Origin: Glycera tridactyla | Taxonomy: Eukaryota | Length of the DNA: 64,000 bases | Assembly: GCA_965644265.1 (NCBI GenBank) | Contig: OZ286463.1 | Span: forward strand, 38,688,001-38,752,000 | Direction of reading: 5' to 3' | Part shown: in pieces, positions 5,001 to 62,536 of the stretch | How the letters are laid out: the number at the start of each line of letters is the position of its first letter | Numbering within the stretch: position 1 is the stretch's first letter | Program-made: the position numbers and the translations under genes | The notes under the pieces: generated by a model | What the model saw: only the letters and a program-made list of their open reading frames with translations | Databases searched by the model: none | Told to the model about the DNA's origin: nothing

Positions 5001-8000
5001 CCAAGCTATCACCACCAAATCTACAACTAGAAAATACTCTCACCACACCAACCTGCAACCGTCGAACCCACAAATACAGAATGATCAATCCAAATATTCT
5101 CAGCACACCAACCGAATATAATCAGACCCACCACAACCAAATTATCTAACCGAATGATCTAAGCACACCAACCCACTTTAATCAGATCCAGTACTATAGG
5201 AAAAGCTTGCCGAATGATTTCAACAAACCAAGCCACTTCATCAAACCCAGCACGATAGAATGAGTTTGCATAATAATCTCAGCATATCAACCCACCATCA
5301 TCAAATCCACCAGTACTAGAAATTCCAGCCAATTCTCATACCACATCAACTGGCGACCATCATACCCACCACTGCCAATTACCCTAGCCAAATGACCTCA
5401 GCACACTGAACCATCTTCTACAAACCTACCTCTGACAAATGACCTTGTCGATTCCCACCCCACTAACTAACCACCATCATACCCACCACTGCCAAATAAT
5501 CACACCAACCCATCACCACCACACCCACCACTTTAACTCAACCTCGACAAATACTCCGCATACCACACCAACCCACCATCGCCATACCAACCATTACCGT
5601 CTAGCTTATTACATCGACCTATCACCACCAAACCTGCCACCATTAGATAGTCTTGCCAAATACCTTCACCACACAGACTCGTCGCCATCAAACCCATCAA
5701 CATATCTGTGAAATAGCTCATCAGATTTTGCCGATGTTCTTACCACATGCTTTGATGTCATCATTGAATCCATTTCGACACATACAGCGGCCCTGAATGC
5801 AGGCGGCATTCGGGTCCAGGCACACATCTCCTGAGCGACACACCTTGTTCAGAGCTATCATCGGATCTATACATAGAGATAGAGACAGGAGTGAAACAAG
5901 GTGTATCTTTATCAACAATAAGGGGAGAGGGGCGGGTGATGACAGCTAAGGAGGGGCAATCATCCGGTGTGACTTTCAATAGCTATTGTTATAATTCTGT
6001 ACCGCATCTCTGGAATCTTCATGATGTTTTAAAGTACTCACTTCGAGAAATTTGAGCATTTTCGTCACCTGGACGTAGGATTTGACTTGACAGCTGACAC
6101 TCGAATCCATACCTGATAAGTTTGTCTGCGAGTGTGTGTGAATGAGTGATTGTGGGAAGGGGTGATTGCGCGAGCAAATAAGTGGTAGAGCAAACAGGTT
6201 AGTAAGTGATGAGTGAGCGGGAGAGAAGTCGAGAGAGGGTGATTGCGTGACAGAGTGAGCGATCACTTACAGCAGGATCCGTCGCGACTGAAGAAGTCAT
6301 CAATGCAGATACAGATGTTGTTGACACATGATGTATGTTGTGCGATACAGGTGAAATCTGGTTTACATGCAGCATCCAGGCTACCCTCCGTCACCACGGC
6401 TACTACAACATACATTTGAAACACTCTTTCTGAATTGATGTCATTTCACTTTAGATATATTTCGATCCTTTCCGGATATTCCCCATCAACAATTCATGAA
6501 GTAAGAATTTCATGCTGCTTCGGGATTCCCAGAAGCATATGGCTGTGTTTTCATAAAAAGACAGAAACTTGAGACAATTTTGAAAGAATTTAGAAAGAGC
6601 TTACACAGTCTTTCAAACATCATTTCACACATATTTTGGAGTACCCACATTTGAAGTCTGCAGGAAGCATGATTTCGGTATGATTGAGTGAAGGCAACTG
6701 ATGTGAAGGGCCGCTGCATTTGTGAAGTGATGGTGAATATAGAGTGTTCAAAACCTACAATCAACTCTGTGTTCTTGGTTGTATACACGTCGGGCGTCTG
6801 AAAGCCACAAGCCTTACTAGGCATACGGATAAATCTTATAAAACTGGGTAGATGATTGGGTTATGAACAGATAGGTGTGGGGTTACTTACAGCAGGAGTC
6901 GCCTATGAAGGTGAATCCCGTGAAGCAGCCGCAGTAGCCCGCGATACAAGCCCCATGACTGTAACTACACTCCAGCGAGCTGCCACACGGCACCCCGAAC
7001 AACGTCGTTATCGACGTCGACACTGAAACATGAAACGTCAGCTTTAAAGACTATGCAATGTCATTTATGTAAGTGCATGTTGCACCCTGATCTGCCATCC
7101 CCAATGCGAACTTATCTCCATCCTGAAATATTCATGCCCCTAGTACAGGTTCCAACTGTCAGATGTATGACAAGGAGAAGTATGATACTCCATTCCAGGC
7201 CGTTCTACAGAGCTGACAAGATCATGCCAGACATTCAGATTTGGCTTTCAGTCCAATGCCCGTATGCAATCAGGCTGCCAACGTGAAAAATACAGGATAG
7301 AGAAGTGAGCTTCTTATCTCCACATAATGACAGTACTGCACCCAAATAGTATTCCCACTTGAACATCCACAAGTTCGAGCATGGAACTAGTGTTGGTGAA
7401 CGTATGCAGCATGAACAAACACAAATTGAAATGCAGAATGACATTTACACACACGGAATGGAATAGGTCTCTCTTTATATATATATATCTATCCATCTAA
7501 TCATCTATCAATCAATTTCTTTCACTTTTGTGGGTTTTTCTAACGAGCAAGTCGAGACAGGGTGATGTTGACTGGGTACTGTCCTGTCACCTGATGCCAA
7601 TAAAGGCTACTTACGACAGAGTCCGTTCTTTTCGCGATAGCCCTTCCTACACGTGCACGTATTGTTAACACACCAGGTGGACAGCGGGGATTCACATATC
7701 CCATCACCGTAACACGCCATACCCACCAGGCCAGCCTGCGCTGTAATACAAACCAACCAACAACTCAAATAAGACTGCTGCGACTCTTGATTAAGTCCGA
7801 AATGACCATTCTGGCAGTTCTGCTTTCCACGTACAAAAACCGACACGTACATGTTGGTCAAAGAAGTGGCGTCAGGAGACTAGATAAATGTGTAGGAGTG
7901 CAGGACATCTAGTCTGCTAGTCATTTAGTCAAGCTACCAGACATCAGTCGAGTCAATCGAGTTTTCGTCGATTGCGATTGAGTAGACAACACTCTCTCCC

Positions 8001-11000: not shown

Positions 11001-14000
11001 TAGTCGAAATGGGACTACCATTGAGAATATCCACTAGTGATAATCATGCGGAACTGCGTATTACAACAGAATGAAACTGCAGACTTGCCCTTCTATTACT
11101 TTGTAATGCCCAGTCATGCATGGGACCTTAGCTCACCCCGTAGCGTCGCTCAGTTGCAAAAAGTGAGCACAGTTCTAGATCAAATTCCCAAGTTCATAGA
11201 TCGATACAGATTGCAAACTTTACTGACGAATACATTCAGGGAAGGTCATGACATCTACAACTCTATATGTAGGACAGCTCTGTCTGCATTGAAATATGAT
11301 CGGAACTAGAGACGAAGATTCTGTCATTTTGATACAAAAATCACATGATAGCAAGACCAAAACATGCGAAGTCGCTGAAGAATAATGACCCGTAGAGTCA
11401 ACACATTCAATCTCTTTCATGTTCGGGTCGACAATTACATCAATGAAGGATATGACTACGTAACATGGTATGTCGAGGAGTTCACTAGCACGCATTTCAT
11501 ATAATATATTTGTTTGATAGGAACACTTACAATGCAGTGCGTCTGTCACCTTGTACGGCTTGCGTCAAGTCATATATCAAGCCTTAGTTCATGCAAGTAA
11601 AAAATCATACCAGCAAAAGATCTGATGAAATATGTGGTGCAGAGTCGCAATATTTGATCCTGACCTCGCGAATTTCTCTTCAATCCCATGACCGGTCACC
11701 TATACGTGTAAGGTTCCTTACTGTAGGAAGAATAGTCAGTATATGAGTGTGACGGTAGAGAGAATGTTATGATACTGTTTGTGTTGAGGCAGATACTGAC
11801 CACAGCTTCCATACATGTTGACGTAGCCCGCCACACAGTGACACTGTCCATCAATACAAGCCGCATGCTCCCCCTGGCAGATGTCATCGAAACTACAAGC
11901 TGTACCCAACGTCAAAAATGGAACTGCAAAACATTAAATCAACATTCGTCATTTCCCTGACCATTCTATATATCGTACGTGAATTGTCGGTAATAGGGAC
12001 AGATAGATGAACCCGTCTCAATATAATACACATGTGCACGAACACCAACACTGCACTACACAAACACACACACATACACACATCATCGCCACCACCACAA
12101 TATGAAAATGAGTGAGTCAATCAGAAGTTGTTCGTTTGGTTGTCTGTTTGTTCGTTTATCGGTTCGTTTATTGTCGGCATGAGCGTTTCTACAGGTTCTC
12201 GGTGATAGCAAGCAGTCAAATATTGACGAAGGGAACCAGCCAGTGACAATCCCCTACTCCACACAAAATTCCAGAAAGGTTTCTTTTGTGTGTATATGGT
12301 AACAAACACAAGAACAGCTGGTCTGCCTTTGACGCATAATTGTAAGTGTTCAGGAGTCGACTAGTAGACAGTGGTTGAAGGTTGCATATTCAGTAACATC
12401 ACAGAAGAATGCGGATATGGGGAGAATCTCCGGCACTTGGAGACTTCACCAATATCAAGGACCTCACAACTTACCACAGAGATTGAGTTTATGGAAGTGT
12501 CCAGAGGCACAGAGACAGAAGCCATTATAACAGCGTGAGTTGAAAGGCAAACACTGGGTACCGTGTAAACACGGTGTATCAATCATCCCCATAGCAACTG
12601 AAAACAAAATGAGAACATGGCGTCTAGATTGTATGAATGTCTCGAATGGGCACAGATACCACTGTTTGCTACCAGATTTTTTACAATACATCTCCATCGA
12701 TAAGGATTTCATCCATGTCGGGCATGGTAGTCAACATAAAATCAAGAATCTCAAGAATCTGAAGATACCAATGAAATCGCAATCAAATGGGCTATTGATG
12801 TGGGTATAATTCTACGTTGTTATGATCAAACTCCTCACATTAAGTGCATATATCAAAACACGAAGCTATGGCGACTGATTGACGTCACCATGACTGGATT
12901 TTCAAGATGGCGGCTTCCAGGAATACGGAATGCGTGAGGGGAATATCACCGTTTACTCACCACATTTGCGTCGATTTTCGTAGAATCCGTCCTGACAGAC
13001 ACAGACTCCATTTCTGCAGACCCCATTAATATCCAGACACTGGTCCCCGGCACTGCACGCCTGATTCAGTGGGACACGAGCCGCTAAAACAGGCAAAATG
13101 TCATGGCGGACAGTCTGCTACAATTTGGGTCGAGCAGTCAGGCGTCCTTTAATGAAGGATGTTTCTACAACGACGCACGACTGCTAGAAAACTCTATAAA
13201 GGTTTTAGTACGAGAATTCTTGAAGACTGATATCAAAACATGAAGAATAGAAGAAAAAAAATGTCAAGCTCAAACTATGGAGGACCTCGAAGGTTCTCCT
13301 CAAACATTACCGAAACTGGTAGAATCACCTGGTATAATTGCCAAAGAACCGGGTTAGCACACACACTCTACATATACTGGAAATATTAGTTGCCTAAAGT
13401 TGGCCTATCTTACCACATCGGTCAGCGCGTGAGAAGTAATCATGAGGACAGACACATTTGCCTCCGAGACAGACAGAGTTAGGTGCCGTGCAGCGATTAC
13501 CGGGAATACAGGGTGCAGCCAGTGTTCCAGGCGACGCAATCGAAACTGAAACAAAAAGCAATGTGAGTTGGGGGCAGCGAAACTTATATTTGATAATGGG
13601 TGACGTGTACAGCAAAAGACAGACAGACAGTCGGGAAAAAAGGGCTGAAAGACAGGCAGACAGTCTTATCATTCATTATTTTATGACAACGAGATCTTTC
13701 TATAGCTCTCATCTACGATATCGACACTGTCTCTATACTGACTATAGTGACTACGATGGGAAAGTGTATCGCGATTTGACTTACTATTTACCTCGATAAA
13801 TACAGTTCATTTTGGGTGTTTGAGTTGGCAGACTTGTTGTAGTAGTTGTGGGATTTAGGTTGACTTACAGCACATGGTATCATGGACGATGAATCCGGAG
13901 TGACATCTACACTGGCCGCCATCACACTCAGCATTAGGATCCAGGCAGACACCAGCCTCTGTACACGTGTCATCTAACGCCACTTTACCAACTGACAGAC

Positions 14001-17000
14001 ATACACACAATATATATATATATATATCTATGTAAATATAACCAAGTCACCCATCACCAACGGCATCAGTTCAATTACATTCACTGGGTCAGGCCAGCAT
14101 CAAATGTCACCCCTAACTTCCACCTGATTCAGAATACAAATATCTCTGAATGAGAATTTTATGAACCCTTTCTCATAAATTGTGAACATTGCACTTGAAA
14201 GTACGAAGTTGGTTAGCAACGTGGAGTACGGTTCGGGTGCAACATGGAAGGCCTGGCTTAGTGGCCTGTTCTCACGAAATGGCTGATGTGAGAAAGTGAG
14301 AGATTCCAGCCAATTCTTGGCCAGCTTGGCAGCCAAAGTGGTAGCTGCTGGGGCATTGTGATGTTACATGCAGTAATAAAAAAAAGCGAGCTCTCATTGG
14401 CAGATCACCTTGGGCTTCTCATACCCCCCCCCCCCCTAGCCTGTAAATGTCTCAAGCTATGGTGGGATAAAACGTGGATATTTAGTTAATCGCGACTACA
14501 AGAACCCCCTCGCTTATGATGCTGACCCCGTGATTCTCCATATCTTCCACATCAAGCTGGATAGATGGCAGTGGAATAACATATGCCAGCTTTGTATTGT
14601 CATCAGTACATTATCCATACGACTTGCAGGGCCAAAATATTGCCTAGGCCGATCAGTTGACAATTATAAGACATTTGTAAAAGATAGGAAGTTGAATGTT
14701 GCATTAATGCTAACTTACCGCAGTGTCCTTGACGTTCGAAGTGCGTTGGGCGACATCTACATTGTCCTTCCCAACAGGTGGCAGCAGGGTCGTCACAGAT
14801 GTCACTATGCATGCATGGTGTGCCAAGGTTCAGACTCGGCACTGAAACATCGGACAAACATTTAAAGCTTAAAGGATTTCTTAGTATTAGTGATGGCACC
14901 AGTCGGCACGACCACTGCCTTCGTCGTAGGCATCTCGATCATTTAACATCTTTGCTAGTTCTGGTACTAATAATCTTCCGTTATTTGGGTGTAGTAGTGC
15001 CTGTAGGGTGGCCGTGGTGGCCTCGGCGACACCTGTTGGAAATCATTGCAACTGAATCATCTCATCATCATAAGTGTTCTCAGTGCGATGTCAGGTCATC
15101 CCTGCCCACGCTGGGTGCTGGATGTGATCATTCATGGCCTAGAGTCCTTAACAAATTGGATTAACAAATATTTTCCTTGGTATACTTCACCAAATAGAGA
15201 CTGTCTCAACTGTCTGCGTGTTTACAATATGGGATACAGGTATGACTGTGACAGTTCACTCCTCTGCAGTGACCATCAATAATCATGACCGGAGATCTGT
15301 GTCATGATGTAGTTTCGGTTGTCAGCTTGGACCGGCCATTTGAACTCCGCTCCCTATTAAATACTGGTATCACGAAGTGGCCGTTACTGACTGGCTGCTC
15401 ACTACTCACCACAGGTGTCAGCCTTGGAGAAGAATGTAGGTTTACAGACACACTGATCACGGACACAAGCGGAGTTGGGGCTGATACACAGCTGTCCAGC
15501 AAGACAGGGAGCTGCCAACATCCCTTTAGGAGCTACAACAAACCACGTCATGAAATCACTCAGACAACAAACACAAATGACCACATAATTTACTCAAGTA
15601 TCTGCACTCAAAGTATTGAAGTACTTCTAATTTCTGCAGTTCGTGAAAACTAAACTCCAACCGCTGAAAATCATATCTGAGTGGAATGAAATATTGATTT
15701 TTTTTTAATTGGCAGCTGGATCATCCTTTTCGTCCATAAAGAGCATTGAAAATAGCATGCACGTACGGGCTCACCCATTTCAGGCTAGGAGTATGATTCA
15801 CAAAGCTTGTACATGCTGACTCCCGGTCCCTCTGACAGAACACCCTCACTAGCAAATCATAATCTCTGTTCCGTAACCATGGCAGGACAGACAGCTGTGA
15901 GCAGTTTTTCGATGAGATCATGCTAAATGCACTTCCAGTGAGAACTGAGTTGACGTCTATCTAATGACAACAGGGGTTGAAATTGCCTCGCTGATCGGAA
16001 TCACATTGCATGTTTGGTGTCGGCGTGATTTGGCGTGACAGGCCCTCTAGACTACAATCAACAGCTATTCTCTAGAATATTTCCCACCTGCTTTAAAATA
16101 CAGGTCATGATGTGTATGAAATGACAGCTACTTCATTGACAACCTCGTTCAATCTAGCCATATGTGTTCAGAGTTTTTTAGAGTGATGCTTACTTCACTC
16201 TGAAAATGGGTTTCGAATTCGAACATGTTTAATTTGGAACATGCTTAGTATTGCGTCTTTCGTCTAATCCCCTAATATCCGAATATATTTAAAATGATAC
16301 ATGTTTGGAATACTGTCCTGTATCTAAACTTCTGAAATATTTAAGAGGAATAGTTGCGAACATCCACTCTGTTGGTACACTTCTGAAAGCAATTTGGGTG
16401 ATGTGAGCAGATGGTGAAAAACTGGATACAAATAACCGCACATAGGTGAAAGCAACTGGTTCGACTGAAGGCTTGCTACCGAAACATATCCAGATAGAGG
16501 TGTTTAAAATTAGCTTGTTTAGACTGTTAGGTGGCAAGATGCTCACAATTTAAACTTGTTTAGAAATCTGGCAACTCCAAAGTACAGACAGGAATCATGT
16601 TTAGAAGTCCGCTTTCTCCTTAACTTTTTGTTCACACTGTAGAGGACAATGCATGCAGTTCTTGTATATAACACGATTTGCATAATCGATAATCGAATGC
16701 AGTCAGATGTGCTGTCAAGCTCCAATCGAGTAATCAAACAAACTATGACAAGATTCGAGGATGTATATGCTTGAAAACTCACCACAGAAGCCATCCCGGT
16801 GGAAGTGTGTATTCTTACATATACAGCGTCCTCGATAACAGAATGCGTTGCGGTCCTCACACTCGTCTGTCAGGTCACACCCAGAATCCAGACTCAACTT
16901 GGGTGCTGGAAACATACAAGCGAGAATCTTGACACAAATTTACTTAGACATACATCACACAGATATGCTGTAAGTATATGCTGGGTATCCCTAGTCTGTT

Positions 17001-20000
17001 CTTTGCACAATCTCTGGGTCTTCTCGGAATTTCAAGTGACCGAGATGATGATGATGCGGATGATGATCATTATCCTTATCATCATCACCATCAACGTCAT
17101 TATCGCCGTCCTCGTTAAAACTAATTACAACAACATGGCAAGCCTATCCAAGGCTGCTCCTTTCGATTTTCGGATCGGGTTTTCTTGTTCGTCGCAATAA
17201 TCAATTTACAACGATACTTACTGCATCTTCCGGATTTCTCGTAGAAGTCGCCCTGACACAGACATGCACCGCGCTCACAGCGAGCATGTGCGTCAAAACA
17301 CACAGTTCCATTCTGACAACTCGACCAAATCGATCCTGGCTGTCCATCGCGAGCTGCAACAGAAGAAATTTATTCTTAAAATCAACTTAACATGTCAACA
17401 TGCCACCCTTTTCTACTTATAAGCCCATCGTTTAACAGTCCACGCTCTATGATATCCCCAACCCCTCCTCTCCCCATTTCTAGAATCTAGCTACGGGTAT
17501 CAATCCTTGTAAATTAGGTGGTTTGTATTTTGGCATCATATAAATGGAACAGTTAAGAAACAACATAGCCTGCACTATATTCATTAACACTTGAATTGGT
17601 GTTTCAGAGTATTGGGGTTTCGCCCCATTATGAGCTGCAGGTTGTGAAGAGCAGGTCATATGAATCTGGGTAACGGTGTGGTCAGCCATCTGAGAAAAGC
17701 AATACATGCCAATATTTATCAGAGTAGGGGCAAGGTACTTTACTTACCACATGCTCCTCCGATATCTTGGAAGCCTTTCTCACATGTACAAATTGATTCA
17801 TGACATACTGCATGGGTATCAGCACACTGGTCCATCATCTCACACGGGTACTGAAGTGCTATCTTCGGTGCTGCAAGTCAAAATCAAACATTAGCTCCTT
17901 CTATGTAACAATTTCGATGGTGTTAATGCTGCTGGTGCTTTTATTATTGGTGACCTTGGTCGGTGCAGGTAATGGTGGAGGTGATGATGATGGTGGTGTT
18001 GATGATTTCTGTGATGGTTGTGGTTATAGTGGTAGTGGTACTGGCGGAAACGGTGGCAACAATGACAACCAATATGATGGTGGTTATGGCGATTTTGATG
18101 ATTATATATACTCACTACAGGCGTCGTTTTTCTCGAAGTAGCCTTGTCGGCACATACAGATGCCCGAGTTACATTCTGTGTTGCTGTCTGTACACCTGTG
18201 ACGTGAATCTCCTGCCACCAAGCACGGTGCTTCCAGCTTACCACGGCGCTCTGTACAGACAATAATAAACACTGTTAGTGATTGTGCCTAACTTCAATAT
18301 ACGCACTTCAAGCCCTGTGCGACATGAAGGAGTATAGTGAGAAATGTGTTGTTTTGCACTCACTCTTCAAGTGCGCAAGATCGACTATTGCTAGGCAGGC
18401 ACCTTTTACCGGACTAAAATCTAAGTTGCTAAAGTTCAACTGGATGGTGCATCGAATGTTGGTATGTGAATGGAATCCTAGTAACTTGTATCAAGATGTA
18501 GGCCATTATTTGATGATGGACCATCAGAAAAAGTTATTTGTATGAGGACATACCACATGTGCCGTGTTTGTTATAGTGTGTGATGGCACAGACGCAGTAA
18601 CCATGGCGACACACAGCGTTATCATCCATACACACATCCTCCTCAGTGCAAGCTTGCTCCAGTGGTATCTTGGAATCTGAAATGGACACAACGTCGAGAT
18701 AAGATCAATTATAGCGGTACAACATTCACCTCAATGTATGAGCAGACAGTGACGACGTCGTGCACAAGGGTGAAGGTGTCGTTGATGACGATCATGGTGG
18801 CGATAAGGACAAGGAGCGAGCTATTTGTAGATGCTTTGGTTCTCAATATAGAAAATCTCACGCTCTTCCTCTCATATGTAACCAAATGGACAATGTTCAC
18901 CATGCAATACCGAATCACTATCTGTACATCGTTCCATACACTCTATATGATTTGGACTTCTCCCAAAGAGGCCCCTCTGTGAAGTGGTCGCTGAGTGGAC
19001 CCACTTTACACCACAACTTTACTTCACCTAGATACTAAAAGGTACTTTGGCTATAGGGAGAGATAATAATTCTAGAGTGCTTAGCCGATGCAATTGATTG
19101 GATGCTTGTGGTTGTAAAACCCCAAGGGAGATGAGAAAGGTTCAAGCTTGAACAAGCCAGCCGAAGAAAGTAATTGGAAAATCAAGAGAATTTCTCAAGG
19201 ATACCAGAACCACTACATTTACATTTTTACCACCACGAAGACTATGATGATATGAACGGCGGCGGCGTCAACGATCTCCAAAAATTCAATACTTACAACA
19301 GGTGGCGTGTAGCTGCCAGTAGTTTTCTTTACAGCGACATCTACCGTCTTGACAAGCAGTTTCTTGATTGGAGCACCCACTCCCTCCGGCACAGGATGAA
19401 CCGAGACTACCTGGGCGAGCTGAAGATAGAGAAAAGTCAGAGTCATCTCCGAACTCGAACCATTTGTGTTACCAAAAGAAGCAAGAACATCCAGTGAAGA
19501 CTGTGAATGTCTGTCTGAATCGTTTGTCATTCACATCCTGCTAGGGAATACAGAAATTACGAAAAGTACTTTTCGTAGATGTGGCCTTAGTATAAATGTT
19601 GTTCACTGTAGAAAATATTATTGCGATCTCAGCATAGAGACGGCTTGACTCCTGATGGAGCCCAAATCATAAAAGTACATAACTAAGAAATAGTGAGATG
19701 ATATCACCGGTGTCAGCAAGGAAATAGGGCGAATTTGCAATCGATATCAGACTCTGAACGAGGGAGCTCTTACCGGTCATATTGTACCTACCACAAATAT
19801 CTCCCTGTCTGTGATATCCGGTAACGCATGCGCAGTAGCCCCCATCACAGGTAGCGCTGGGATCTGCACACTCGTCCCGCTCTCCACACGATTCTCCGAG
19901 TCGTCGACGACGGGCTACAGGACATACATGCATCAAGCATTGATAGACAAGGATGTAGTTAGTGGTCCTACTATCTATAGTTTATTACAACCCAATAAAC

Positions 20001-20666: not shown

Positions 20667-20710
<44 letters not shown>

Positions 20711-22844: not shown

Positions 22845-22875
<31 letters not shown>

Positions 22876-46472: not shown

Positions 46473-46506
<34 letters not shown>

Positions 46507-49500
46507 GCATGATAACAGACAGACATACACATGGCTCTACTCACGGCACGTCCTTGCTCGCTCATAGTATTCCTCTTCACACTTGCAGATATCACGTGCG
46601 ACGTTACACTCAGTGCGAGCTTGTGAGCACGTCTGATCTGGTAGACACGGCACGCCCAGCAAACCACGCGGCTCTGAAACCAAAACCTCATCTTGCAGGA
46701 CAGCATATTCGAGGCCATTAGGCAGGGGTTAATAATATGTGGCAATAGACATAATACTCCATTGTGATGCTAGGTGTATGTTCATGGTAATATCCAAGTA
46801 GCACTGTCGGTAAATGTAGATATGTTTCAACAGTGAAACCGAACAGTGAGTCACGTTCAGATTCTCAGAACAATCCATCAGGTGATGGAAAGTTGCCTAC
46901 CTCAAGATGGTGTTCAGCACCAGACTTGCGTCGTTCCGGATTTGGATCATGTTCACTACTTGTGCCAGAGATATAGATACCATGACAGATGTGGGGGTAA
47001 TACACTTCACACCATTCCACGCCAATCATGATATAGGTATATAGTGGCGCATGATTTCCTATAGCAAAATTGTACGAATGGAACCCAACCTACCCAGCTC
47101 AGTTATGGTTAGGAACTGTATATTCTCGAGATGTCCTGGGGCATGACTAATCTGGCCAATTGATTGGAGACACAAGGCCATGAACGGATACATAGGCTGA
47201 AGTGCGAGAACACAAACGCAGACTAGGATGCGCGCACTCATACACATACACTGGTTGACCTACCACATTTGCCGTCCTTCCTGTAGAAGTCAGGTTTACA
47301 CAGACATCTCCCTGATTGACACTCGGCATTAGCGCCCTCACACTTTCCACCATTAGCACAGTTCTCATCTAGCGACACCAGAGGAACTGAAATACCAACC
47401 AATCATTGAGTGTAATCTGAAAGGGATCAGCAATGATTAACATATTACAGATACAGCTTCGTGGGGGGTCGTCCTTTTGTTCGGCCGGATTCAGATTTGT
47501 GAAAAACCCTGATAGCTCACCTCAATCAGAGTGATCGCATGAGGGCCTGTTTTAGCAGGACTTTGACTGCCTGGTAGCATCCACTAGCCACGCGCTAAGA
47601 TTAGACAAGCACCAAGTGATGCCATGCTCTTAATACGTCAAATACTTGGCAGAATTGCGGTCTACAATACATATAGTATGGATAAAATATGGATTTCTGT
47701 CACCCTTCTAGAACCTAGTGAAACAACCATCTAGGAGTGTTCTGCTCTGCTCTGCTAGCATACACATGAATCCATCATGCTGATCGATGGCATTCAATAT
47801 GTTACGAAATGATGCACATATTGAGATAGAAGTATATAAATCAAGAGGAACCATACCACATTTGCCTTGATGGGCAACATATCCTGCGACACATTGACAT
47901 TTGCCAGACTGACATCTTGCGTTAAGGTCCTCACACTCGTCGCGAAATGTGCAAGAGTCATCTAGCGGAATTAACGTAACTACAACAGATGAAATGGCAG
48001 TACTCACGATCCAGGCTGGCACGATTCAGGTTCAGCTGTTTCGCGTCGGAGCTTCACTGTATTGATTACCGATTATCAGGATTGTTCAGCTCATTTTATT
48101 CCGAAATCGATGTGGGCTGTCAGATGTGAATTGGTTTATCGCCCGATTCACTGGAATACATTTCGTCGTAATGAACACTCATCATCGGCCCCGGCCTATT
48201 TATATCATGAATCATAGAGGAGCTGTCAGAGATTGAGTTATATGAGAATGAACTTATTTTTTTTTTCTTTACAGGGGATGGATAACCGGTAAGACCGTTT
48301 GAATCATTATTTGCCGACAGCCAAATGCAGGTATGTAACCATTGTTAATTCAGATCAAGGTATATTTTGAATACATGTGGGTGAAGAATAGCATCTGTCG
48401 CGAGTTACTACTGACTGACCTTTTACGTCGAATGTGTTTAATATAATATATTGCTTCAATATGATTCTGAAAAACGGCACTATTTGTACCAAAGCGAAGG
48501 AATGGGGGTATAGGGGCTCCTTATGCTTAATGGTGGTGGTGGGAGTGGTGAGTGGATGGTGGTGGTCTAGTGGTGGCGGCGACGGTTATTGCTGCTGGTG
48601 GTGATGGTGGTGATGGTGGTGGTGGTGGTGGTGGTGGTATTGGTGAGTGGTGGTATAGGGTACAGTTCAGGGTGGTGTGGACCTGTTACGTCGGTATGTG
48701 GGTGGTGGGTGGAGGTTTTCGATGGTAATGATGGAGATAGTTGTAGCCATAGTAACTTACTGCAGTCATTGTTACGTTCGACATATTCTGGTTGACACAC
48801 GCACGTTCCTGCTCGACACTCGTGCTTGGCATCGATACAGTCGGAGGACGTACGACATTTGTCGTGGAGTCCAGACGGACGAACTGTCAACACACCAGTA
48901 AAACACTCGCTTGAAAGCTGGAAGAACACCCTAGCTTAAGTCCGTTAGAGTGAGCATATAATTATTTCTCTTGGAGAGTAACAATATCCTTTTCTGGGCC
49001 CTTTCAACTACAATCCGAATAAGGAGCAGATACATGGACTGTGGTGGTGTTACATGAGTACAGACGAAGCTGCTCGAGAGACCATCTCTCTATAGAGGCC
49101 ACCTGCCTATAAAGGCCACTCTGCGTTGTGACCGTTGTAGTATTTTCAACAGTAAATGAAGGCCAACTGCCTATAAAAGCTACTTTCTGATGCTATTGAA
49201 GGTGGCCTTCATAGACAGGTCAGACTGTTTTCAAAGTGCGTGCCATATCGTGAAACTGAGGACAATTCTGGTACATCAGGTCCTACATTTAAGATACATT
49301 TGTATCTAAAATAGTGAGTTAATCTCAGGATTGATATTTGGTCACTGGAAGTACATTTTTATCTTAGATACATTAATCCACTCACCACATTTTCCTGATT
49401 GTTCCACCCAGCCCGGCTTACAGAGACACACTCTTCGATCACATTGTGCATTGGAATCTTCACAGATATCGGAAGGCCCACATACTTCATTCAATGGAAT

Positions 49501-52500
49501 CAAGGCAACTGAAAGACATTCAGAAATTACAACCGATTTCAATCTTGCATGATAAATACACAGTTCAGGAATATTCAGTGGAATATTGGACTCGTCTGTA
49601 AGTGAAAACGTGCTTGTATAGCAACCGATATCTATCAGAAGCTTGTCGGCTCCGGTGATTATATTTCTCGGCAGAGCTATCCTCTGACATATGAGGCACA
49701 AATTGAGGAGCTATTTCAGCAGAGGGGGCTCGGTGATCTTTACTCCAGGCGGAAGATGTGGTAAATGAACTTGAAATATCAAAAATGCACATCACGGCGC
49801 ATAGCCAGGTATTGATTTACATATGAGCCCGAGTACGACTAAGGTAGAAGGTTACTCAGGATCTGCTCGGATGCGCCTTTTCCCGATCTTCTACTCACCG
49901 CACTTGCCCAGGTCTTCGACGAATCCTTGCCGACAGAGACATACACCTCGATCACACTGTGAGTTGGGATCCTCACAGAGATCGTCCACACCACATCTCT
50001 CATTCAACGGAACCAGCGAGACTACAAGATGAAAGATGTACAAATGTACACACAATATTACTACTGTACGACACAAGTTGGGATTTATACAGCGATTTCG
50101 CATAGGATAAAGTCTGATTGAAATGCTGGTGTAAATCGGAATGCCCAATATATAGCAAGTTTATCCTTTCAAAGGCACTCAATTCCCTCAAATATCACAC
50201 AAGTTGAATACATCATATTCGATAGTATGACGAGTATGTCATGCATTATGTACTTATATTGAAAGCACGATTATTTGTTTATAGAAATGCCGAATAACTG
50301 CTCTTCTGGGTCACAATGAATACATCTTGTCAAGTACATTGGTCGCAGGCAGTCATAACTCGTTCTCAGACAAAAGGTGACCTCTGTAAATGATACACAG
50401 GATGGAATACTGAAAGTCATAGATGGGCGAAATGTAGTAAAGCTGCTGCCGTCGATTTTTGTTTTCTGTGGAGACCGGGGGCATTTCACTAGCAGGGGAG
50501 GATATACAAACAATGTCATAAGTGTTTGGAAAAAACACGGTAATTAAGTATTTAAACACAGGTAGTGTACATGCAATATTCGTGTGGTTGATTGATGGCA
50601 GGAATTTGATATCATTCACTCGACAAATCTTATTGATAACATGGATTTCTTTCTGATTGTATCTTATCGGGCGTGCTACTGTAACAGACAGAACATCGCG
50701 TATGTACCACATTTCACTCACCACATCTGCCCTCATTCTCTAGGAAGCCGGGTTGACAGAGACAGGTGCGACGATCACAGTGTGCGTTCGGGTCCTCACA
50801 TATGTCATCATGGGCACAGCGCTCGTTGAGAGGCACCAGACGCACTTCAAACAAAGAGGAGAAAACAATACGTACACATACAGTCGAGGTTGATATTGAC
50901 GGAATGTGGAGTGGGGAGAAGTGCGCAGCCTTACAGTGGCCATGTGGTGTCAGATAGATGACCTGCTGATATATATTGAGTGGATGACTTTGATTTTCGA
51001 GTGGCAAGATGACGTTGACCTCTGAGTCCGTGATAGTTTACACTGATTTTCTAGAACTGTCTCACTATGTATCAATCCAACATTTTGTGTGTCACTGGTA
51101 TATGAAAGCTGGGTGATCTGTTTCCTGCAGACTTCACTCTCACGAACCATGAAAGCGTAATGTTGTCAAATAAATGTAACTGATGAACCTATAGATGATA
51201 TATTTGCATTGAGAACGGAATGCGCTGGAAGACATTATAATGGTGTTATCATCATAACATGGGCTTGATCACCTGGCCACGAGAGATTGTATGAGCTAAG
51301 TCACCCAGCGAGTGAAGTACAACACTGAGGCAAGAAAATAAGCGTGTGTGTGAGCGTGCATGCTGCACGTACCACATTTGTCACGGTCCATATTTTCCAC
51401 GTAGCCCGGTTGACACAGACACAGTCGTCTATCACAGTGGGCGTTAGTATCTTCGCAAACATCGGCTGAACCACACACCTCATTCAGCGGAATTAATGGG
51501 ACTATGAATACAATCAAGTTATCGATGAGACAATTAGGATTGTAAGAGGCCCGATTCTGTACAAGACCAATGAGCAGTNNNNNNNNNNNNNNNNNNNNNN
51601 NNNNNNNNNNNNNNNNNNNNNNNNNNNNNNNNNNNNNNNNNNNNNNNNNNNNNNNNNNNNNNNNNNNNNNNNNNNNNNNNNNNNNNNNNNNNNNNNNNNN
51701 NNNNNNNNNNNNNNNNNNNNNNNNNNNNNNNNNNNNNNNNNNNNNNNNNNNNNNNNNNNNNNNNNNNNNNNNNNNNNNNNNNNNNNNNNNNNNNNNNNNN
51801 NNNNNNNNNNNNNNNNNNNNNNNNNNNNNNNNNNNNNNNNNNNNNNNNNNNNNNNNNNNNNNNNNNNNNNNNNNNNNNNNNNNNNNNNNNNNNNNNNNNN
51901 NNTCCATCCATATGTTCTCCCATCCATCCATTCATTCATCCAACCATCACCCATCCATCCATCCATCCCTCCATCTAATAATCCATCTATTTATCTTTAT
52001 CACCCACGTATGTCCATTGTGAGGATCCTTTTCATTCTTTCCCGCGTTATTAACCGGATTTGTCTTCATATTTAAGAACAGGAAAGCCTAATAAGCACGA
52101 TGTTTCTAATTGTTTATGAACAGAATATTAGATAGAAGTAGGAGAGTTGTGATTCTGAGGAAATGTGGTAGGTGCTATGATTGATGGCGAGCTATAAAGC
52201 ATGTGTACGCACCACATTTGTGGAGGTCCATATTTTCCACGTAGCCTGGTTGACACAGACACAATCTCCTATCACACTGAGCGTTTGTATCTTCACACAC
52301 ATCGGTTGGACCACAGACCTCATTCAGCGGAATTAATGGCACTGAAAATATTATGGAGTTGAGACAAATCAATTGCCACAGAGCTGACGAAATCACAGTG
52401 GTATGATAAAGAGTGTATTCCCTCGAAAATTCACTTCTACGATGTTTATGACGAAATTTTCCCCAGTCATGAGGAAAAACAAAAGGATGAGATTATCTAT

Positions 52501-55500
52501 TGAAATTTGTATGCCTTCAATATTCCGAATCCTATGGTGTGAACGCATAATATTATGTTGGTGTTCACAATTATTTCTGTCCAATAATTTACATGATCCA
52601 ACCAAGTTCCACCTGGCATCACAATGAAAAACACCTGAATGAGTGTGAGAATGAATTTCAGTCAATTCATTTTATAATACACTAATCCACAGCTTACAGC
52701 CAACTTCAAGCAACTATGTTGGGGTGCACTGGGTAATCATATGTGGCAATGATGAGGCTGAATACACTCATCAAAGGCAAAAGCAATAAAATACATGCAT
52801 GCAGCATAGATACAATCTGAAGAGCGAGAGCAGCAGAGAGTATCGGTGTGAACTGACCAAAGCTGGTTGCATTAGGCGTACGCTCTCAGCTGCCATGCAG
52901 TGTCTCCATGGGAAAACTAAAGTGATTCGATTCATGACTGATGGAGAAGTTGATATCATATACAAAAAATATAGATGTGTATGTATATGTAAACATGGGA
53001 ATGGAGGTGTTGGGTATACTAAGTAAGATAAGTATTGAAGCAAGAGGTAATGGGGATATGTAGGTCAGAGCATTAAATACAACACAGGCACAATAGGATG
53101 CACCCCGATATATGGGTAGATTAATGCTGTGAGCATAACTCTGCACAATAATAAGCGAGTGCAGCACCAGAGATGCGATCAATTTGCAGTTTGCTTGATA
53201 ATAAACTATTCCAGGATGAACATGCTCTGGTGTTCTAATCCACACGAGAAGAGTGTGTTGGTAACAACGTGTATGTTTGGATGCTTGTCTATAAGCAGGT
53301 GAAAGGCAATAGATTTTGTTGCAGGCAGATGGATGCACATTCCTATTAAGACGCTGCATACCACATTTGTTGAGATCTTCGTTTTCAACGAAACCCGGCT
53401 TACAGAGACAAAAGCGCCTATCACAGAGGGCGTTGGTGTCCTCACAGATATCACTGGGGCCACACACCTCGTTTAGTGGGATTAACGGCACTAGAAAAGG
53501 AATCCAACTCACATGAAATGGCTTTGATTCACTCACCACCCGAATTTTACCACCAATCATATCCCTGTTTCTGTCGGCAGGCTCATTAGATTATTACTCC
53601 ATAGTCAATATTATTCTCCTCATATGAGGCCTTTCATGCACTCTCTACCCAGGTGAGAAGAGGCACAACTAGTCATGGCATGGTATAACCGTAAGAAAGG
53701 TGGCAGGATAGCTAGCCTGTATGAAGTGAACATATAGCTACACCAATTAAGGACTACAAGACAGCCCCCCAGTACTCAGTTCAAAACAATGGTTTAGGTC
53801 AACAGTGTATTATTGCAAATGACCCCAAATTAGCCAAAGGAGTACCCCACTTCTACATACACGCAGCAAACAAACATAAGAGCACGGGCTTAATAATTCA
53901 ATCCCAGTTAGAGAGTCACGCCTTATCAATACCGAACCTTTCACCATAATCTCCACTTACCACAGACGCCATTGTTGTCAGTGAATCCTGGTTTACAGAG
54001 ACACGTCCTACGGTCACAGTGTGCATTGCCATCCTCACACACATCGTTAGGACCGCAGTACTCATTCAGTGGCACAAGCGGCACTGAAACATAATACGGG
54101 ATGCTGAGGTGCTATGTGGTTGAATGCAGTGATATCACGTTTAAAGAACCCACAGCATTACCATCAATACTAGAATACGATAGGCAAACAAAATTGCACG
54201 AACCAGTACATGACATCATCTGTGAAGAGAGAGTTTCAAGGTACAGAACAGTCCAGGGTAGAATAAACAGTACATGGGAGACAACAAATTGTGGGTAGGA
54301 GTAGCCAAGGGACAATAGTGTGTCGAGTCCGATGATGTGAGAGTGGTCCACGGTCTCAACTATCAACCAGGTTGTGTCCAAGGTCGACCTGAGGCATTGT
54401 CTCGTCTCGCCCACTGCGGCCCAGGTCCGATTGCCGAGACAGAGCACAACAGCAACACGCCTAGGCTTCCATAATTTGCTGAGACGCACGGTCCTCACCC
54501 TCACCCTTTCCCGAACCCCCATGCAGGACAGTGGGACTTCTAATGGCTGGTACATTCTCACCACATCTGCCGTTGTTCTCGGTGAATCCCTGTCTACACA
54601 GACACAGTCGGCGATCACACTCGGCGTTAGCGTCCTCACACACGTCACTCGGTCCACACACCTCATTAAGTGGTATCAATGGCACTACAAACATCCGTAT
54701 TGAGACAATCTTTACTCACAGTTTCTTCTGAGGTATATGCAATTCTACCAAAAAATCCAATCGCATGTTTTGAGACGTCATCTATTATTTCCGTTTTGCT
54801 CACACCATCTGCCCCAGTAAGCTTTGAGTATGGGACGTGCATATGACAGGATGATACAGAGGGTGTTCACCAAACATGAGAGACCGAATTCATGAAACCT
54901 ATCGACATCAATACACAACAATATTTCGCGATGACTGCCCCTCTCGCTCAGCTGAAAGACTTCTGAAAGCTTTATAGCATATGCACAGGTCCTTGTTGGC
55001 TCTTATCCCCCTCCATACAATAATATCTCGTGGAGCTGTTTCATTACAAACGATTTTTTAAGGATGAATGAATGAATAAGTCCATACCACAATGATAACT
55101 CATCACTAAGTTTGTAGTGGGCTTCGTCAAAATATAAACGTAGTGATGGATGTGATGGTACTGCTAGATCTGTTGCCTGGAAATATTGCCTGGAGATATT
55201 GAGAGTAGATACGAAATCCACGAGTACGACCCTCCAAGTGTAAACCAGCAAGACGCTATCACAATAATTTCAACTGTAGTAGAATCCAGTCATTTCTAGG
55301 GTGCATACCCGCCCATCATACCCCAGGTCATCTTCCCCACTCGTATGTATAAGAAGCAGACCTTTCGGACAGGGAATTTTGGAAACTCCCTGGGACGCAA
55401 GTTCTCAGTCAGTAGATGCAAAACAGTCGAAACAGTCATGTGTCATAGAGAAGATTATTTTACCACAGACTCCCGTTTGTTCGACGAAGCCCGGTTTACA

Positions 55501-58500
55501 GAGACAGACTCGCCGGTCACACTCCGCGTTGTCATCCTCACACACGTCATTTGTACCACACACCTCGTTCAGCGGCACCTTCGGAACTAGAAAAAGTAGA
55601 AAAGAATGTATTACTACTAGCGATACCTCTTCACGATTTTACTGCGTTCGGGGGGGGGGGGCGTACGATGGGAAGGCAACATTTTAGTTAAAAGATGTTA
55701 GATTTCGTACCCACATAGATGGGCAAGATAAAATGTATGCAGTTCCTGGATTTCTCACTGTGATATGTTAACCAACTAGAACAAATCATTCGATAAATGC
55801 ATTAGTTATGAGCATACTCAACCACTGCTGTTATATCTTCTGACTAATTCTTTATCTCTACCTTTTCATCACTCACGCAGCTCGATGATTGACTGCTGCA
55901 TTTGCTGTAGACATTCATTCTGCATCCGTATTCAGCGGTGGGTCAGAGATTAACTCGCACTGTCTGCAGAATGTGTTGTCAGTAACTGCTTTCATTTACC
56001 TTAATTCATCATGCAATCGTTCGATCATATTTACCTTTGTTTATCATTTCGCATCTTACACTGTATCTCCTCTATTTAAACGGTCTGGTCCAGATAGGGA
56101 TTCAATTAAATTCAGCCCAATTCATAATATTTAATGGCCTCGAGTGTCAGTAAGTGTGGGTATTGTTGAGAGTGTGTTCTTCAGTTGAGGGGAGTGTCAT
56201 TGTGGGTGATGACGGTGGTGTCGGTGGTGGCATTGGTGGTGACGGTTACGTTGGAGGTGTATGTTGCCGAGGAGGGTATCACTCACCACAGATGCGGTTC
56301 TTCTCGAAGTGTGAATCAATACAGAGACACGTGCCGGCCTGACAGCTGGCGTATGGATCCTCACATTTATCCACAGATCCGCACCGATCATTGAGTGGGA
56401 TAGAGCCAACTGGAAACAGAGAAATCAGACATGGCTACAGGTACACCAGGATGAAATTGTATGATATAAAATAGAGAAGTCTCATTTGCGACATCAAAAT
56501 GGGAGTCTAAGTTCAATGATGGAAACTATGATATTGAATTGAGAGAAACAACCATGGAGAATAGAGGCAGTGAACAGGCATCAGTCGTGACTGGCAATGA
56601 TAATTCTAAAGAATGTTCCCCTTCATGAGATACGTGAACGGAATATTCCCAATGATCCCCTTTTTACGCTCTTTGAATCTGCACACAATAAACACATGAA
56701 TCGATAACTAGAATCAATCCAACCACCGAACATCCAAAGTAAATGAAACATATGCAAGCCATCACGTTCACACATATGAAACAACCCTCATAATTTACAA
56801 TGTAGGCGCTAGGTGCGTAATTCTGTGCTGACCTTCATTTGTGTCAGCCAGCAACCTATCTTGTGTGGGGCCATTTTATAGGGTGAAATGAATTAGCTTG
56901 AAGAGTGTTGTAGTCTGCTCCAGCATACTTACCACACTGGTCCTGTCTCTGGTAGAACTGGGGCAGACACTGGCAGGTGCCCGACTGACACTCGGCATTC
57001 ATTGTCTCACACTCGTCCCCACGATCACACGAGTACGTCAACGGAACCTTCGGCTCTACGACAGCACAACATACAAACACCACTCACAGATCCCTCGCAA
57101 CACATGTGACACCACGCTCCCAGCCATATACAAACTCGTGATACCCTTCGCGTAATTTCATTACAATTAAATTACCAGTTAACTTTTTACAGCCTTGATT
57201 CTCATTTCCATACGACGAATATATGTAAAGGTATAATACCCGCATGGTGATTCAACGGGGATGCAATTGAATTTCGAGAGGCGTTCATCATCTAAAAGTA
57301 TCACTTTTGTTTCCTCCCATTAGTATCATGTTTCAAGTTAGTTATTAGGAATATATGATAGCGCAGTGCTATTACGACTATACATAACAATCACCACACC
57401 CTTTCAAACCACACTGGGTATCGATCAGAGGATATCGATCAGGAAACGTCTATGGCTGTGATGATGATGGGTTCATCGAGAGGTCACAAGTTTTTCTGCA
57501 GATCATCATTTTGATTTCCTTGATCAACTTGATGGAGCAAATCAGGTCAACGTTTGAATTATTGGTTGTTCGAAATCAATCACAAATACAGTGATAGAAG
57601 TGCATACCTAATCGATGTTCAACTGTTTAATGTCTCGTGGGCACCAGCTGAGCCCCATTGAGGTGCCCGCGAAGGTGAAGTAATGTGTTATGAATGTGCC
57701 ATGACTATGAATTCAAACATGTTGGACAGGCAAATCTTGCTTCTATAGAATGAGTTTGCTTTCAGCCCGGATCTGTATGCCTGTTGGTATTGTGATGTAA
57801 GATATACTCACCACATCTATTGTTTTTCTCGAAGTGGGTGTCTGGACAGAGGCAAGTGCCACCACGGCATTCCCCGAGTGGATCCTGACACACGTCATCT
57901 GAGCCGCATGCACGATTCAATGGAATCTTGGATTCTGAAAGTAAATCCAAACTGATTTAAATCATAGTAGGACTCTGGCCAAAATGTGTCAATCCTCAAG
58001 ACAATAGTCAGTCGAGAGTGCCTGAGGGTATATGATACATGAAAGACCAGAAATAAAACCACAGGCTGATGATAGAAGGGTATCAGGACGACCGACCGAC
58101 TCGCCAACCGACCGCCGCTTTTCGCTGGTCAACCGACCGACCCTATTAACCAGCTGTTAACAGGCGCTCGGAGAAGATCGGCGGCGGACCTGTCAACTTT
58201 GATGCAGGATATTTCAGCAACCGCATGACATACAACGAAGGCGAACATGGGCCTGTAAAGAACACAACTGGATGATTCTCCGAGCTGAGTTTCATTATCT
58301 TTCAATGGGTTTATCACCTCCAAATACGAGTGCAAAGTTGAGATTTTACGGCAAACTTTCGCCATTGGCATTGCGAATCATGGCCTGCGATCTCCCGGTG
58401 ATGGGTTCCCACACAGAACGCCGCCGTTTGCCATATTTATTACACAAAATGTGTGCAAACGATCGTTTTCTGACATGTCATGATGGTTACTAGTGAAAGT

Positions 58501-62536: not shown

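What the first reader, a model, noticed from the sequence alone, without database searches (positions are those of the whole stretch)
5744..62536. One module per exon, all phase 1-1: a frame-safe cassette system with scattered weak splice sites
Seen: every module exon is a multiple of 3 (49 of 77 are 123 bp) with phase-1 introns on both sides, so skipping any subset keeps the frame and whole disulfide units. Several splice sites are non-consensus: donors gtcagt (M68, M5), gttagt (M36, M24, M2), gtgcgt (M13), gtgggt (M71); aag acceptors (M51, M22, M15). Knowledge: symmetric phase-1 exons are typical of shuffled extracellular modules. Inference: the locus could produce combinatorial length and sequence isoforms, or allelic copy-number variants, as a diversified recognition molecule.
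Basis: partly seen in the sequence, partly recalled or inferred. Interest (0 to 1): 0.7.

Follow-up and report, generated by a model that had tools for sequence, protein, structure and literature searches.

The report
Giant 77-module EB-repeat membrane protein gene
This is one very long invertebrate gene in which each of 77 exons encodes one small six-cysteine "EB" bead. The frame-safe exon design is real but is the ordinary signature of a protein built by exon duplication, and I found nothing to show that it is a shuffling or diversity-generating system.

Summary
On the minus strand, 62536 to 5744, there are 77 exons. Each holds exactly six cysteines, ends one base after the sixth Cys codon, and has an AG acceptor and a GT donor in phase 1-1. 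All lengths are multiples of 3, and 49 are 123 bp.

The modules are Pfam EB modules (PF01683; 10 of 10 tested pass the cut-off). The array codes 3,248 residues and is probably followed by a transmembrane exon.

- **Splice sites:** the "weak" sites occur at about background frequency. Donors are strong overall (+5 G in 76 of 77). The two sites that can be compared are consensus in an orthologue.
- **Selection:** the most similar modules have saturated synonymous sites, unalignable introns and dN/dS of 0.1-0.3.
- **Orthology:** genomic contigs from another species carry the same phase 1-1 design. There, 21 of 25 modules match their positional counterpart best among all 77.
- **Extra modules:** no hidden or decayed modules exist in the introns.

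So this is an old, position-conserved array, not a fast-diversifying one. No RNA run was listed, so exon skipping could not be tested. All four assembly gaps lie inside introns.

The parts
5744..62536 (-). Array of 77 EB-module exons of one gene (exon 1 = 62536-62363, exon 77 = 5866-5744). The full exon coordinates are in the report text.
   Evidence: 77 of 77 exons have AG/GT in phase 1-1 and six Cys; 10 of 10 tested modules hit PF01683 above the cut-off; no further modules in the introns.
47264..62536 (-). Exons 1-20: N-terminal block of type-A modules only (linker motif P-x-[IV]-P-L). Exon 1 also carries a Thr/Pro-rich mucin-like stretch. Exons 9-17 (55586-49386) are the most similar set.
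   Evidence: non-Cys identity is about 45% at lag 1 within exons 1-20, and the highest pair is 13/14 at 88%; even here pS is 0.38-0.9 and dN/dS is 0.09-0.33.
12475..46673 (-). Exons 21-67: alternating two-module super-repeat. Type B has linker x-x-G-x-L-x-x-P and then C-L-P-G-N. Type A is as above. The register shifts at exons 47/48 (B-B) and 63/64 (A-A).
   Evidence: identity at even lags exceeds identity at odd lags, and 0 of 5,000 order permutations reach the observed value.
5744..11923 (-). Exons 68-77: more divergent membrane-proximal modules.
3790..3874 (-). Candidate transmembrane exon. It has a phase-1 acceptor, about 22 hydrophobic residues, then C-C-C-C-Y-W-L-R-R and a gtaaga donor.
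   Evidence: sequence read directly. Its join to exon 77 is inferred, not shown.
25776..31074 (+). Ngaro-like tyrosine-recombinase retrotransposon, antisense, inside intron 46/47. It makes that intron 6,765 nt long, against a median of 512 nt.
   Evidence: ORFs match GDSL/SGNH hydrolase, RVT_1, an RNase H-like domain (RVT_3) and Phage_integrase. ORF table.
62050..62220 (.). Assembly gap in intron 1/2.
   Evidence: 142 nt from the exon 1 donor and 78 nt from the exon 2 acceptor.
51579..51902 (.). Assembly gap in intron 13/14.
   Evidence: 310 nt and 77 nt from the flanking splice sites. A CCAT-type simple repeat lies beside it.
24113..24246 (.). Assembly gap in intron 48/49.
   Evidence: 57 nt and 212 nt from the splice sites. 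GAT/GAC simple repeats lie on both sides.
22525..22663 (.). Assembly gap in intron 50/51.
   Evidence: 332 nt and 170 nt from the splice sites.

Best explanation
The stretch is the body of a single minus-strand gene of a marine invertebrate. Earlier notes call the animal a probable annelid. The gene encodes a very long extracellular chain of 77 small six-cysteine EB modules (3,248 residues). It starts with a Thr/Pro-rich stretch and probably ends in a single transmembrane helix.

Each module sits on its own symmetric phase 1-1 exon because the array grew by tandem duplication of an exon together with its flanking introns. An N-terminal block of type-A modules came from one unit. The long middle part came from a two-module (A/B) unit. 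The duplications are ancient, and each position has since kept its own sequence under purifying selection.

The most likely mode of use is constitutive splicing of all exons into one rod-like, disulfide-stiffened surface or matrix protein. Its length and position-specific modules appear to matter. Frame safety is a by-product of how the gene was built, not evidence of a cassette mechanism.

Shown: the exon anatomy, the domain family, the age of the duplications and the selection on them, and module-by-module orthology with the same intron phases in another species.

Inferred: constitutive inclusion, membrane anchoring, and a structural or adhesive role.
For: - Exon anatomy and counts.
- EB family: (25-39 bits against a cut-off of 24.3, matching profile positions 15-52 of 52).
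- Invariant six Cys.
- Strong donors overall: +5 G in 76 of 77, +4 A in 66 of 77, +6 T in 69 of 77.
- Old duplications under purifying selection.
- No extra or decayed modules in the introns or in 20 kb on either side.
- 75 of 75 profile matches in the whole genome fall in this locus, as do 26 of 31 Pfam EB matches.
- Orthologous contigs L006 and L007 from another species carry the same phase 1-1 exon design, with introns mostly of 61-243 nt.
- 21 of 25 of their modules have the positional counterpart as their best match among the 77 (binomial p about 3e-36). Non-Cys identity is 43% to the counterpart and 23% to the other modules.
- With the extra module found, exons 21-35 and 56-66 are collinear one-to-one. 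Length variants such as the 36-residue exon 58 are also conserved.
- Further fragments keep exon 1/2 and exon 53/54 features.
- A/B alternation.
- Candidate transmembrane exon.
Against: - No transcript evidence of any kind: no RNA run was listed, so constitutive inclusion is an inference.
- The 5' end (signal peptide) and the 3' end are not defined. Nothing in the flanks matched relatives.
- The N-terminal type-A block shows no clear one-to-one orthology with the other species, so that part of the array has turned over between lineages.
- A domain-level homologue, a Mya arenaria EB-FN3 receptor phosphatase, has NCBI model isoforms that each lack exactly one 42-residue EB module. Single-module skipping of EB exons is therefore at least annotated elsewhere.
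- Four gaps could hide sequence.
Confidence: 0.72

Rival explanations
1. One reading: the array is a regulated cassette system. Subsets of the symmetric exons are skipped, helped by weak splice sites, to give combinatorial length and sequence isoforms of a recognition molecule.
For: - All exons are phase 1-1 and self-contained six-Cys units, so skipping is frame-neutral for 2,912 of 2,926 possible joins.
- Symmetric modules are known to favour frame-preserving exon skipping in animals (Patthy 2019, PMC6335736).
- NCBI models for a Mya arenaria EB-repeat receptor include isoforms lacking one module each.
Against: - Unusual sites are few, and the donors are otherwise near-consensus.
- The two comparable 'weak' sites are consensus in the orthologue, which carries gttagt at other positions instead.
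- Each module is individually conserved across species.
- dN/dS is 0.1-0.3.
- No alternative or duplicate exons lie in the introns.
- The Mya isoforms lie in near-identical repeats, where read mapping is ambiguous, and that protein is not an orthologue: its architecture is EB-FN3-phosphatase.
Confidence: 0.12
2. The array is a fast-evolving, copy-number-variable locus: modules are born and lost through unequal crossing-over, with allelic length variants.
For: - The tandem architecture itself.
- Lack of one-to-one orthology in the N-terminal type-A block.
- The similar block of exons 9-17.
Against: - Synonymous sites are saturated even in the most similar block. The closest pair, 13/14, has dS of 0.52.
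- Flanking introns are unalignable.
- The longest and best DNA repeat is 84% over 157 nt, and all others are 60-72% and confined to exons.
- At least 26 consecutive-position modules are collinear with another species.
Confidence: 0.06
3. The stretch is not one functional gene. It is either two or more adjacent EB genes, for example split at the 6.8-kb intron holding the retroelement, or a decaying pseudogene array.
For: - No transcript evidence.
- The ends of the gene are undefined.
- A retrotransposon sits between exons 46 and 47.
Against: - All 77 exons are open, and all six Cys and both splice sites are intact in every exon.
- Selection is purifying.
- The phase 1-1 chain is uninterrupted across the large intron.
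- No signal-peptide or terminal exon was seen inside the array.
- The retroelement is antisense and lies wholly within the intron.
Confidence: 0.06

Closest known systems
EB module proteins (Pfam PF01683; first described in C. elegans, often auto-named 'prion-like-(Q/N-rich) domain-bearing protein 25' in invertebrate annotations)
   Same: Every tested module passes the Pfam cut-off. It is a tandem extracellular cysteine-rich repeat of unknown function.
   Different: - Only profile positions 15-52 are matched, so the modules have six Cys. By my recollection Pfam describes eight.
- With 77 copies in one gene, it far exceeds the best database hits. Those had at most about 44 matched stretches, and the top score was 412 bits.
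- No Kunitz, FN3 or phosphatase partner domains were seen here, unlike the Ylistrum and Mya proteins.
Class 1-1 symmetric module exons of extracellular mosaic proteins (EGF repeats of fibrillin or Notch; Patthy's exon-shuffling rule)
   Same: One disulfide-bonded module per exon, with phase-1 introns on both sides. Growth by tandem exon duplication, and frame-neutral gain or loss (PMC6335736).
   Different: - The module is EB, not classical EGF.
- The intron positions are kept in one relative, but introns are absent between some modules in others.
Combinatorial cassette-exon systems (CD44 variable exons, tenascin FN3 repeats; from memory, not tested)
   Same: A run of consecutive symmetric exons whose skipping keeps the frame.
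   Different: There is no transcript evidence here. There are no conserved weak sites. The modules are individually conserved under purifying selection.
Mya arenaria LOC128237427 (EB x24, FN3 x7, tyrosine phosphatase; XP_052808916 and isoforms)
   Same: It has tandem EB modules. Model isoforms X4 and X5 each lack exactly one 42-residue module.
   Different: It has a different architecture and is not an orthologue. Its tail finds nothing downstream of this gene. The isoforms are computational models in near-identical repeats.

Membership tests
EB module repeat protein (PF01683) | The module scores above Pfam's gathering threshold | tested here: met
   10 of 10 modules score 25.5-38.8 bits against a cut-off of 24.3; 26 exons of this locus exceed the cut-off in the genome scan.
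EB module repeat protein (PF01683) | The full-length module with eight conserved cysteines (Pfam description, from memory) | tested here: not met
   only profile positions about 15-52 of 52 are matched, and there are exactly six Cys per module in 77 of 77. This is a six-Cys short form of the family.
Class 1-1 symmetric module exons (exon-duplication or exon-shuffling architecture) | Each module is bounded by phase-1 introns on both sides, and the module boundary equals the exon boundary | tested here: met
   77 of 77 exons. The same design appears in the orthologous contigs L006 and L007.
Class 1-1 symmetric module exons (exon-duplication or exon-shuffling architecture) | The splice junctions are actually used in mRNA | not testable with these tools
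   no RNA run was listed, so read laying could not be used.
Combinatorial cassette-exon or diversified receptor system | Transcripts with variable inclusion of module exons | not testable with these tools
   none was listed.
Combinatorial cassette-exon or diversified receptor system | Weak or regulated splice sites conserved at the variable exons | tested here: not met
   the exon 22 AAG acceptor and the exon 24 gttagt donor are cag and gtgagt in the orthologue. Only 2 of the 10 odd sites could be compared.
Combinatorial cassette-exon or diversified receptor system | Diversifying selection or rapid turnover of modules | tested here: not met
   dN/dS is 0.09-0.33; one-to-one positional orthology for exons 21-35 and 56-66. 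Turnover is seen only in the N-terminal block, and it is old.

The most novel reading that the evidence does not exclude
Despite its conservation, the array may be used as a true cassette system. Tissue- or individual-specific skipping of subsets of the 77 symmetric EB exons would give many length and sequence isoforms of a surface recognition protein. The fixed module identities would then serve as an addressable 'alphabet'.
Probability: 0.1. Interest if true: 0.65.

Novelty: new member of a known kind. Interest (0 to 1): 0.3.

Why it matters
As it stands, this is a clean and extreme example of a textbook rule, one extracellular module per symmetric phase-1 exon, in a domain family (EB) whose function is unknown.

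Two things add modest value. This is by far the largest EB array found in the searches made here. Its modules are also conserved position by position between species, which suggests that the length and order of the chain are functional.

If long-read cDNA showed combinatorial exon use, the gene would become a rare invertebrate case of large-scale cassette diversity. Nothing found here predicts that.

Tried and rejected
- **Species identification through the retroelement RT:** the best hit is 50% identical and unnamed. This gave no help.
- **Signal-peptide exon:** the search of 62537-74000 gave only one weak candidate.
- **Tails of the Ylistrum and Mya proteins, and all 159 retrieved proteins, against the gene's flanks:** no hits.
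- **Same-parity test over exons 21-67:** not significant (301 of 2,000), because the A/B register shifts twice. The lag-based test is significant.
- **Fold search of the AF2 module (pLDDT 92.5):** no significant match. Foldseek E-values were above 1. The best VIA-align Z was 3.9 (AgRP and knottins), with Pfs25 EGF at 3.2. EGF-like and knottin-like folds cannot be told apart.
- **Mya arenaria gene DNA:** The exon basis of its isoforms was not checked.
- **Literature:** almost nothing exists on EB modules, and nothing on giant EB arrays.
- **Spliced model:** it was never joined or searched as one protein.
- **Gaps:** they were not filled.

Full report
**1. What is there**

A six-frame scan shows that all cysteine-rich open stretches lie on the minus strand. 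A regular expression for six spaced cysteines finds exactly 77 modules.

- Each module has an in-phase AG upstream and an in-phase GT immediately downstream.
- In six exons two in-phase sites exist, and I chose the better consensus. The exon table is then 123 bp x49, 126 x12, 132 x8, 129 x4, and one each of 135, 144, 174 and 180. All are multiples of three and total 9,744 nt, or 3,248 codons.
- Every exon contains exactly six Cys.
- Every exon ends one base after the sixth Cys codon.
- In 66 of 77 exons the exon starts 26 nt before the first Cys. A GT at one fixed dinucleotide in 77 of 77 copies cannot be chance.
- Introns are 155-1,250 nt (median 512). The exception is intron 46/47 at 6,765 nt.

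Exon coordinates (exon:first-last base on the minus strand):

1:62536-62363 2:61971-61849 3:61069-60944 4:59889-59767 5:59099-58977 6:57934-57812 7:57055-56933 8:56409-56287 9:55586-55464 10:54684-54562 11:54083-53961 12:53490-53362 13:52341-52213 14:51501-51373 15:50844-50722 16:50021-49899 17:49508-49386 18:48883-48761 19:47979-47857 20:47386-47264 21:46673-46545 22:46335-46213 23:45712-45587 24:45147-45025 25:44776-44651 26:44302-44180 27:43896-43771 28:43542-43420 29:43009-42887 30:42285-42160 31:41636-41514 32:40755-40630 33:40474-40352 34:39546-39421 35:39108-38986 36:38616-38491 37:37863-37732 38:37370-37248 39:36401-36276 40:35636-35514 41:35268-35143 42:34605-34483 43:34042-33920 44:33259-33137 45:32429-32298 46:31720-31598 47:24832-24710 48:24435-24304 49:23900-23778 50:23127-22996 51:22354-22229 52:21772-21650 53:21068-20889 54:20539-20417 55:19914-19792 56:19419-19297 57:18676-18554 58:18250-18116 59:17870-17748 60:17353-17222 61:16905-16783 62:15532-15410 63:14841-14719 64:13991-13869 65:13545-13414 66:13083-12961 67:12597-12475 68:11923-11801 69:10962-10840 70:10082-9939 71:9471-9349 72:9162-9040 73:8828-8706 74:7740-7615 75:7022-6891 76:6402-6271 77:5866-5744.

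**2. The gaps (tested first, as asked)**

- All four N runs are intronic, in introns 1/2, 13/14, 48/49 and 50/51. They lie 57-332 nt from the nearest splice site, so no reading frame runs across a gap.
- Because every exon is phase 1-1, the frame is the same on both sides whatever the gaps hold.
- Three of the four gaps abut simple-repeat DNA, which is a likely cause of the assembly breaks.
- The A/B alternation is unbroken across the two gaps that lie in the alternating part.
- The estimated gap sizes (134-324 nt) are smaller than one exon plus two of the shortest introns (about 430 nt). Those sizes are only estimates, however, and continuity could not be tested, since no run was listed.

**3.

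- In context, acceptors are cag 52, tag 22 and aag 3.
- Donors have G at +5 in 76 of 77, A at +4 in 66 of 77 and T at +6 in 69 of 77. A pyrimidine sits at +3 in 5 of 77, and those five keep AGT at +4 to +6.
- From general knowledge of metazoan splice sites, a few percent AAG acceptors and a few percent +3 pyrimidines are normal. This is therefore a strong-site gene with ordinary scatter.
- "Skipping any subset keeps the frame" is true. However, 14 of the 2,926 forward joins would put a stop codon at the junction, including the single skips of exon 57 and exon 70.

**4. What the module is**

- Ten modules spread along the array all hit the Pfam EB module PF01683 above the cut-off (25.5-38.8 bits), always over profile positions 15-52.
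- The alignment of all 77 has only the six Cys invariant. The consensus adds L before Cys1, D-x-C-x-D-x-N-A in the first loops, and G-x-C-x-C.
- An AlphaFold2 model of one module, built with the 77-row alignment, is confident (pLDDT 92.5) and shows a small beta-hairpin domain.
- PDB searches gave only weak matches: knottins and AgRP at Z of 3.9 or less, and Pfs25 EGF at Z 3.2. The fold class is left open.

**5. Architecture of the array**

- Exons 1-20 are all of one type, A (linker P-x-[IV]-P-L). Exon 1 adds a Thr/Pro-rich stretch.
- Exons 21-67 alternate between type B (linker x-x-G-x-L-x-x-P, then C-L-P-G-N) and type A. The register shifts at 47/48 and 63/64.
- Identity at even lags exceeds identity at odd lags, and 0 of 5,000 permutations of module order reach the observed difference.
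- The middle of the gene therefore grew from a two-exon unit.
- A candidate transmembrane exon (3874-3790) has a phase-1 acceptor that would join exon 77 in frame. This join is inferred.
- No further modules lie in 20 kb on either side or in the introns.
- In the whole 2.04-Gb genome, all 75 profile matches at E <= 1e-5 fall in this locus, as do 26 of 31 Pfam EB matches. These counts are lower bounds.

**6. Age and selection**

- Even within the most similar block (exons 9-17), pS is 0.6-0.9.
- The closest pair, 13/14, has dN 0.05 and dS 0.52, a ratio of 0.10. Where dN/dS can be computed it is 0.09-0.33.
- One hundred nt of flanking intron on either side aligns no better than unrelated DNA.
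- The best direct DNA repeat in 57 kb is 84% over 157 nt (exons 13/14). All other copies are 60-72% and confined to exons.
- The duplications are old, the protein sequence is held by purifying selection, and little homology is left to drive unequal crossing-over.

**7. Relatives**

A profile of the 77 modules was searched against 1.84 billion representative proteins.

- It found 1,665 proteins at E <= 0.001. The best scored 412 bits, so no protein of comparable size from this subfamily is in that library.
- The named top hits are bivalve proteins with other architectures. Ylistrum has alternating EB and FN3. Mya arenaria has EB x24, FN3 x7 and a tyrosine phosphatase.
- Annelid fragments (Ridgeia, Capitella) also appear.

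More informative are two Logan contigs from another, unnamed species: L006 (25 modules by pattern, 26 with the profile) and L007 (11 modules).

- They show the same exon design: an acceptor 26 nt before Cys1, a donor one base after Cys6, and phase 1-1.
- Their introns are mostly 61-243 nt, with three longer ones (310, 435 and 577 nt).
- Two junctions have no intron, at the counterparts of exons 28/29 and 61/62.
- 21 of 25 of their modules score best, among all 77 of ours, against the module at the corresponding position. The other four rank 2-7 (p about 3e-36).
- Non-Cys identity is 43% to the counterpart and 23% to the rest.
- With the profile-detected counterpart of exon 22, exons 21-35 and 56-66 are collinear one-to-one.
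- Idiosyncrasies are shared: the 36-residue span of exon 58, the long linker of exon 53, and the Thr/Pro-rich exon 1.
- A Tara metagenome scaffold carries the counterparts of exons 55-57 with no introns at all.
- In contrast, the eleven type-A modules upstream in L006 have no clear one-to-one partners among exons 1-20. That block has turned over between lineages.

**8. Bearing on the cassette idea**

- Only two of the ten odd sites have a comparable orthologous position. The exon 22 AAG acceptor is cag in L006, and the exon 24 gttagt donor is gtgagt.
- L006 and L007 have gttagt at the counterparts of exons 27 and 57 instead. These look like drifting neutral variants.
- The general idea that symmetric modules make exon skipping frame-preserving is published (Patthy 2019, PMC6335736).
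- There is one precedent for single-module skipping of EB exons. Mya arenaria LOC128237427 isoforms X4 and X5 each lack one 42-residue module.
- Those are computational models in near-identical repeats, and that gene's DNA could not be fetched.
- Direct evidence for or against skipping in this gene is missing.

**9. Procedure notes**

- The spliced model was never joined for a search. Exons were searched one by one by reference.
- Earlier notes of this scan supplied the label "probable annelid" and the Ngaro reading of the intronic element. Pfam supports the Ngaro reading.

**10. Verdict**

- The gene is a new, very large member of a known kind: an EB-module repeat protein with class 1-1 exons.
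- The diversification reading is not supported by sequence evidence and remains untested at the RNA level.

Noticed in passing
window 25776-31074 (+), inside intron 46/47: An apparently intact Ngaro-like retrotransposon. Its ORFs match GDSL/SGNH hydrolase, reverse transcriptase, an RNase H-like domain and a tyrosine recombinase. It is antisense to the host gene. The closest RT in the protein collection is only 50% identical.
   Followed up: partly
G000:C51:39302224-39302361 (-): A Pfam EB match elsewhere in the genome lies in an uninterrupted open frame of 4,006 residues. This may be a giant single-exon gene with EB modules. Two more EB matches lie on the same contig.
   Followed up: no
L002 4719-4774 (-), about 6.2 kb upstream of exon 1 (window-equivalent 68719-68774): A candidate signal-peptide exon: an 18-codon ORF starting with ATG, a hydrophobic core, T-Q-A, and then a phase-1 gtatgt donor that would join exon 1 in frame. 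It is unsupported by any homology.
   Followed up: partly
L008 (Tara metagenome scaffold), 150-509; also P0015: Counterparts of exons 55-57 (and of about 49-54 in P0015) are contiguous, with no introns, in contigs of unknown organisms. One module per exon is therefore not universal in this gene family.
   Followed up: partly
L006 5144-5172 and L007 2163-2191: In the orthologue, the introns corresponding to ours between exons 28/29 and 61/62 are absent, so two modules share one exon. In the window these introns are 410 and 1,250 nt.
   Followed up: partly
window exons 47/48 (24832-24304) and 63/64 (14841-13869): The A/B alternation slips register twice, with B-B and A-A neighbours. The A-A pair is shared with the orthologue, so it is ancestral. 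The B-B pair has no comparison.
   Followed up: partly
window 6399-6402 (-), exon 76 acceptor: Tandem TAG-TAG (NAGNAG) acceptors lie 3 nt apart. Either keeps the frame and changes one residue.
   Followed up: no
window 35388-35437, 37499-57572 region (37499-37572), 48531-48654, 4822-4865 and gap flanks: Many introns carry (TGG/GAT)n-type trinucleotide tracts on the + strand. The same kind of tract flanks three of the four assembly gaps.
   Followed up: no
model mae1255df2ae3 (exon 17 module): The confident AF2 model of the six-Cys EB module lines up slightly better with inhibitor-cystine-knot peptides and AgRP than with EGF domains. All scores are too weak to decide.
   Followed up: partly
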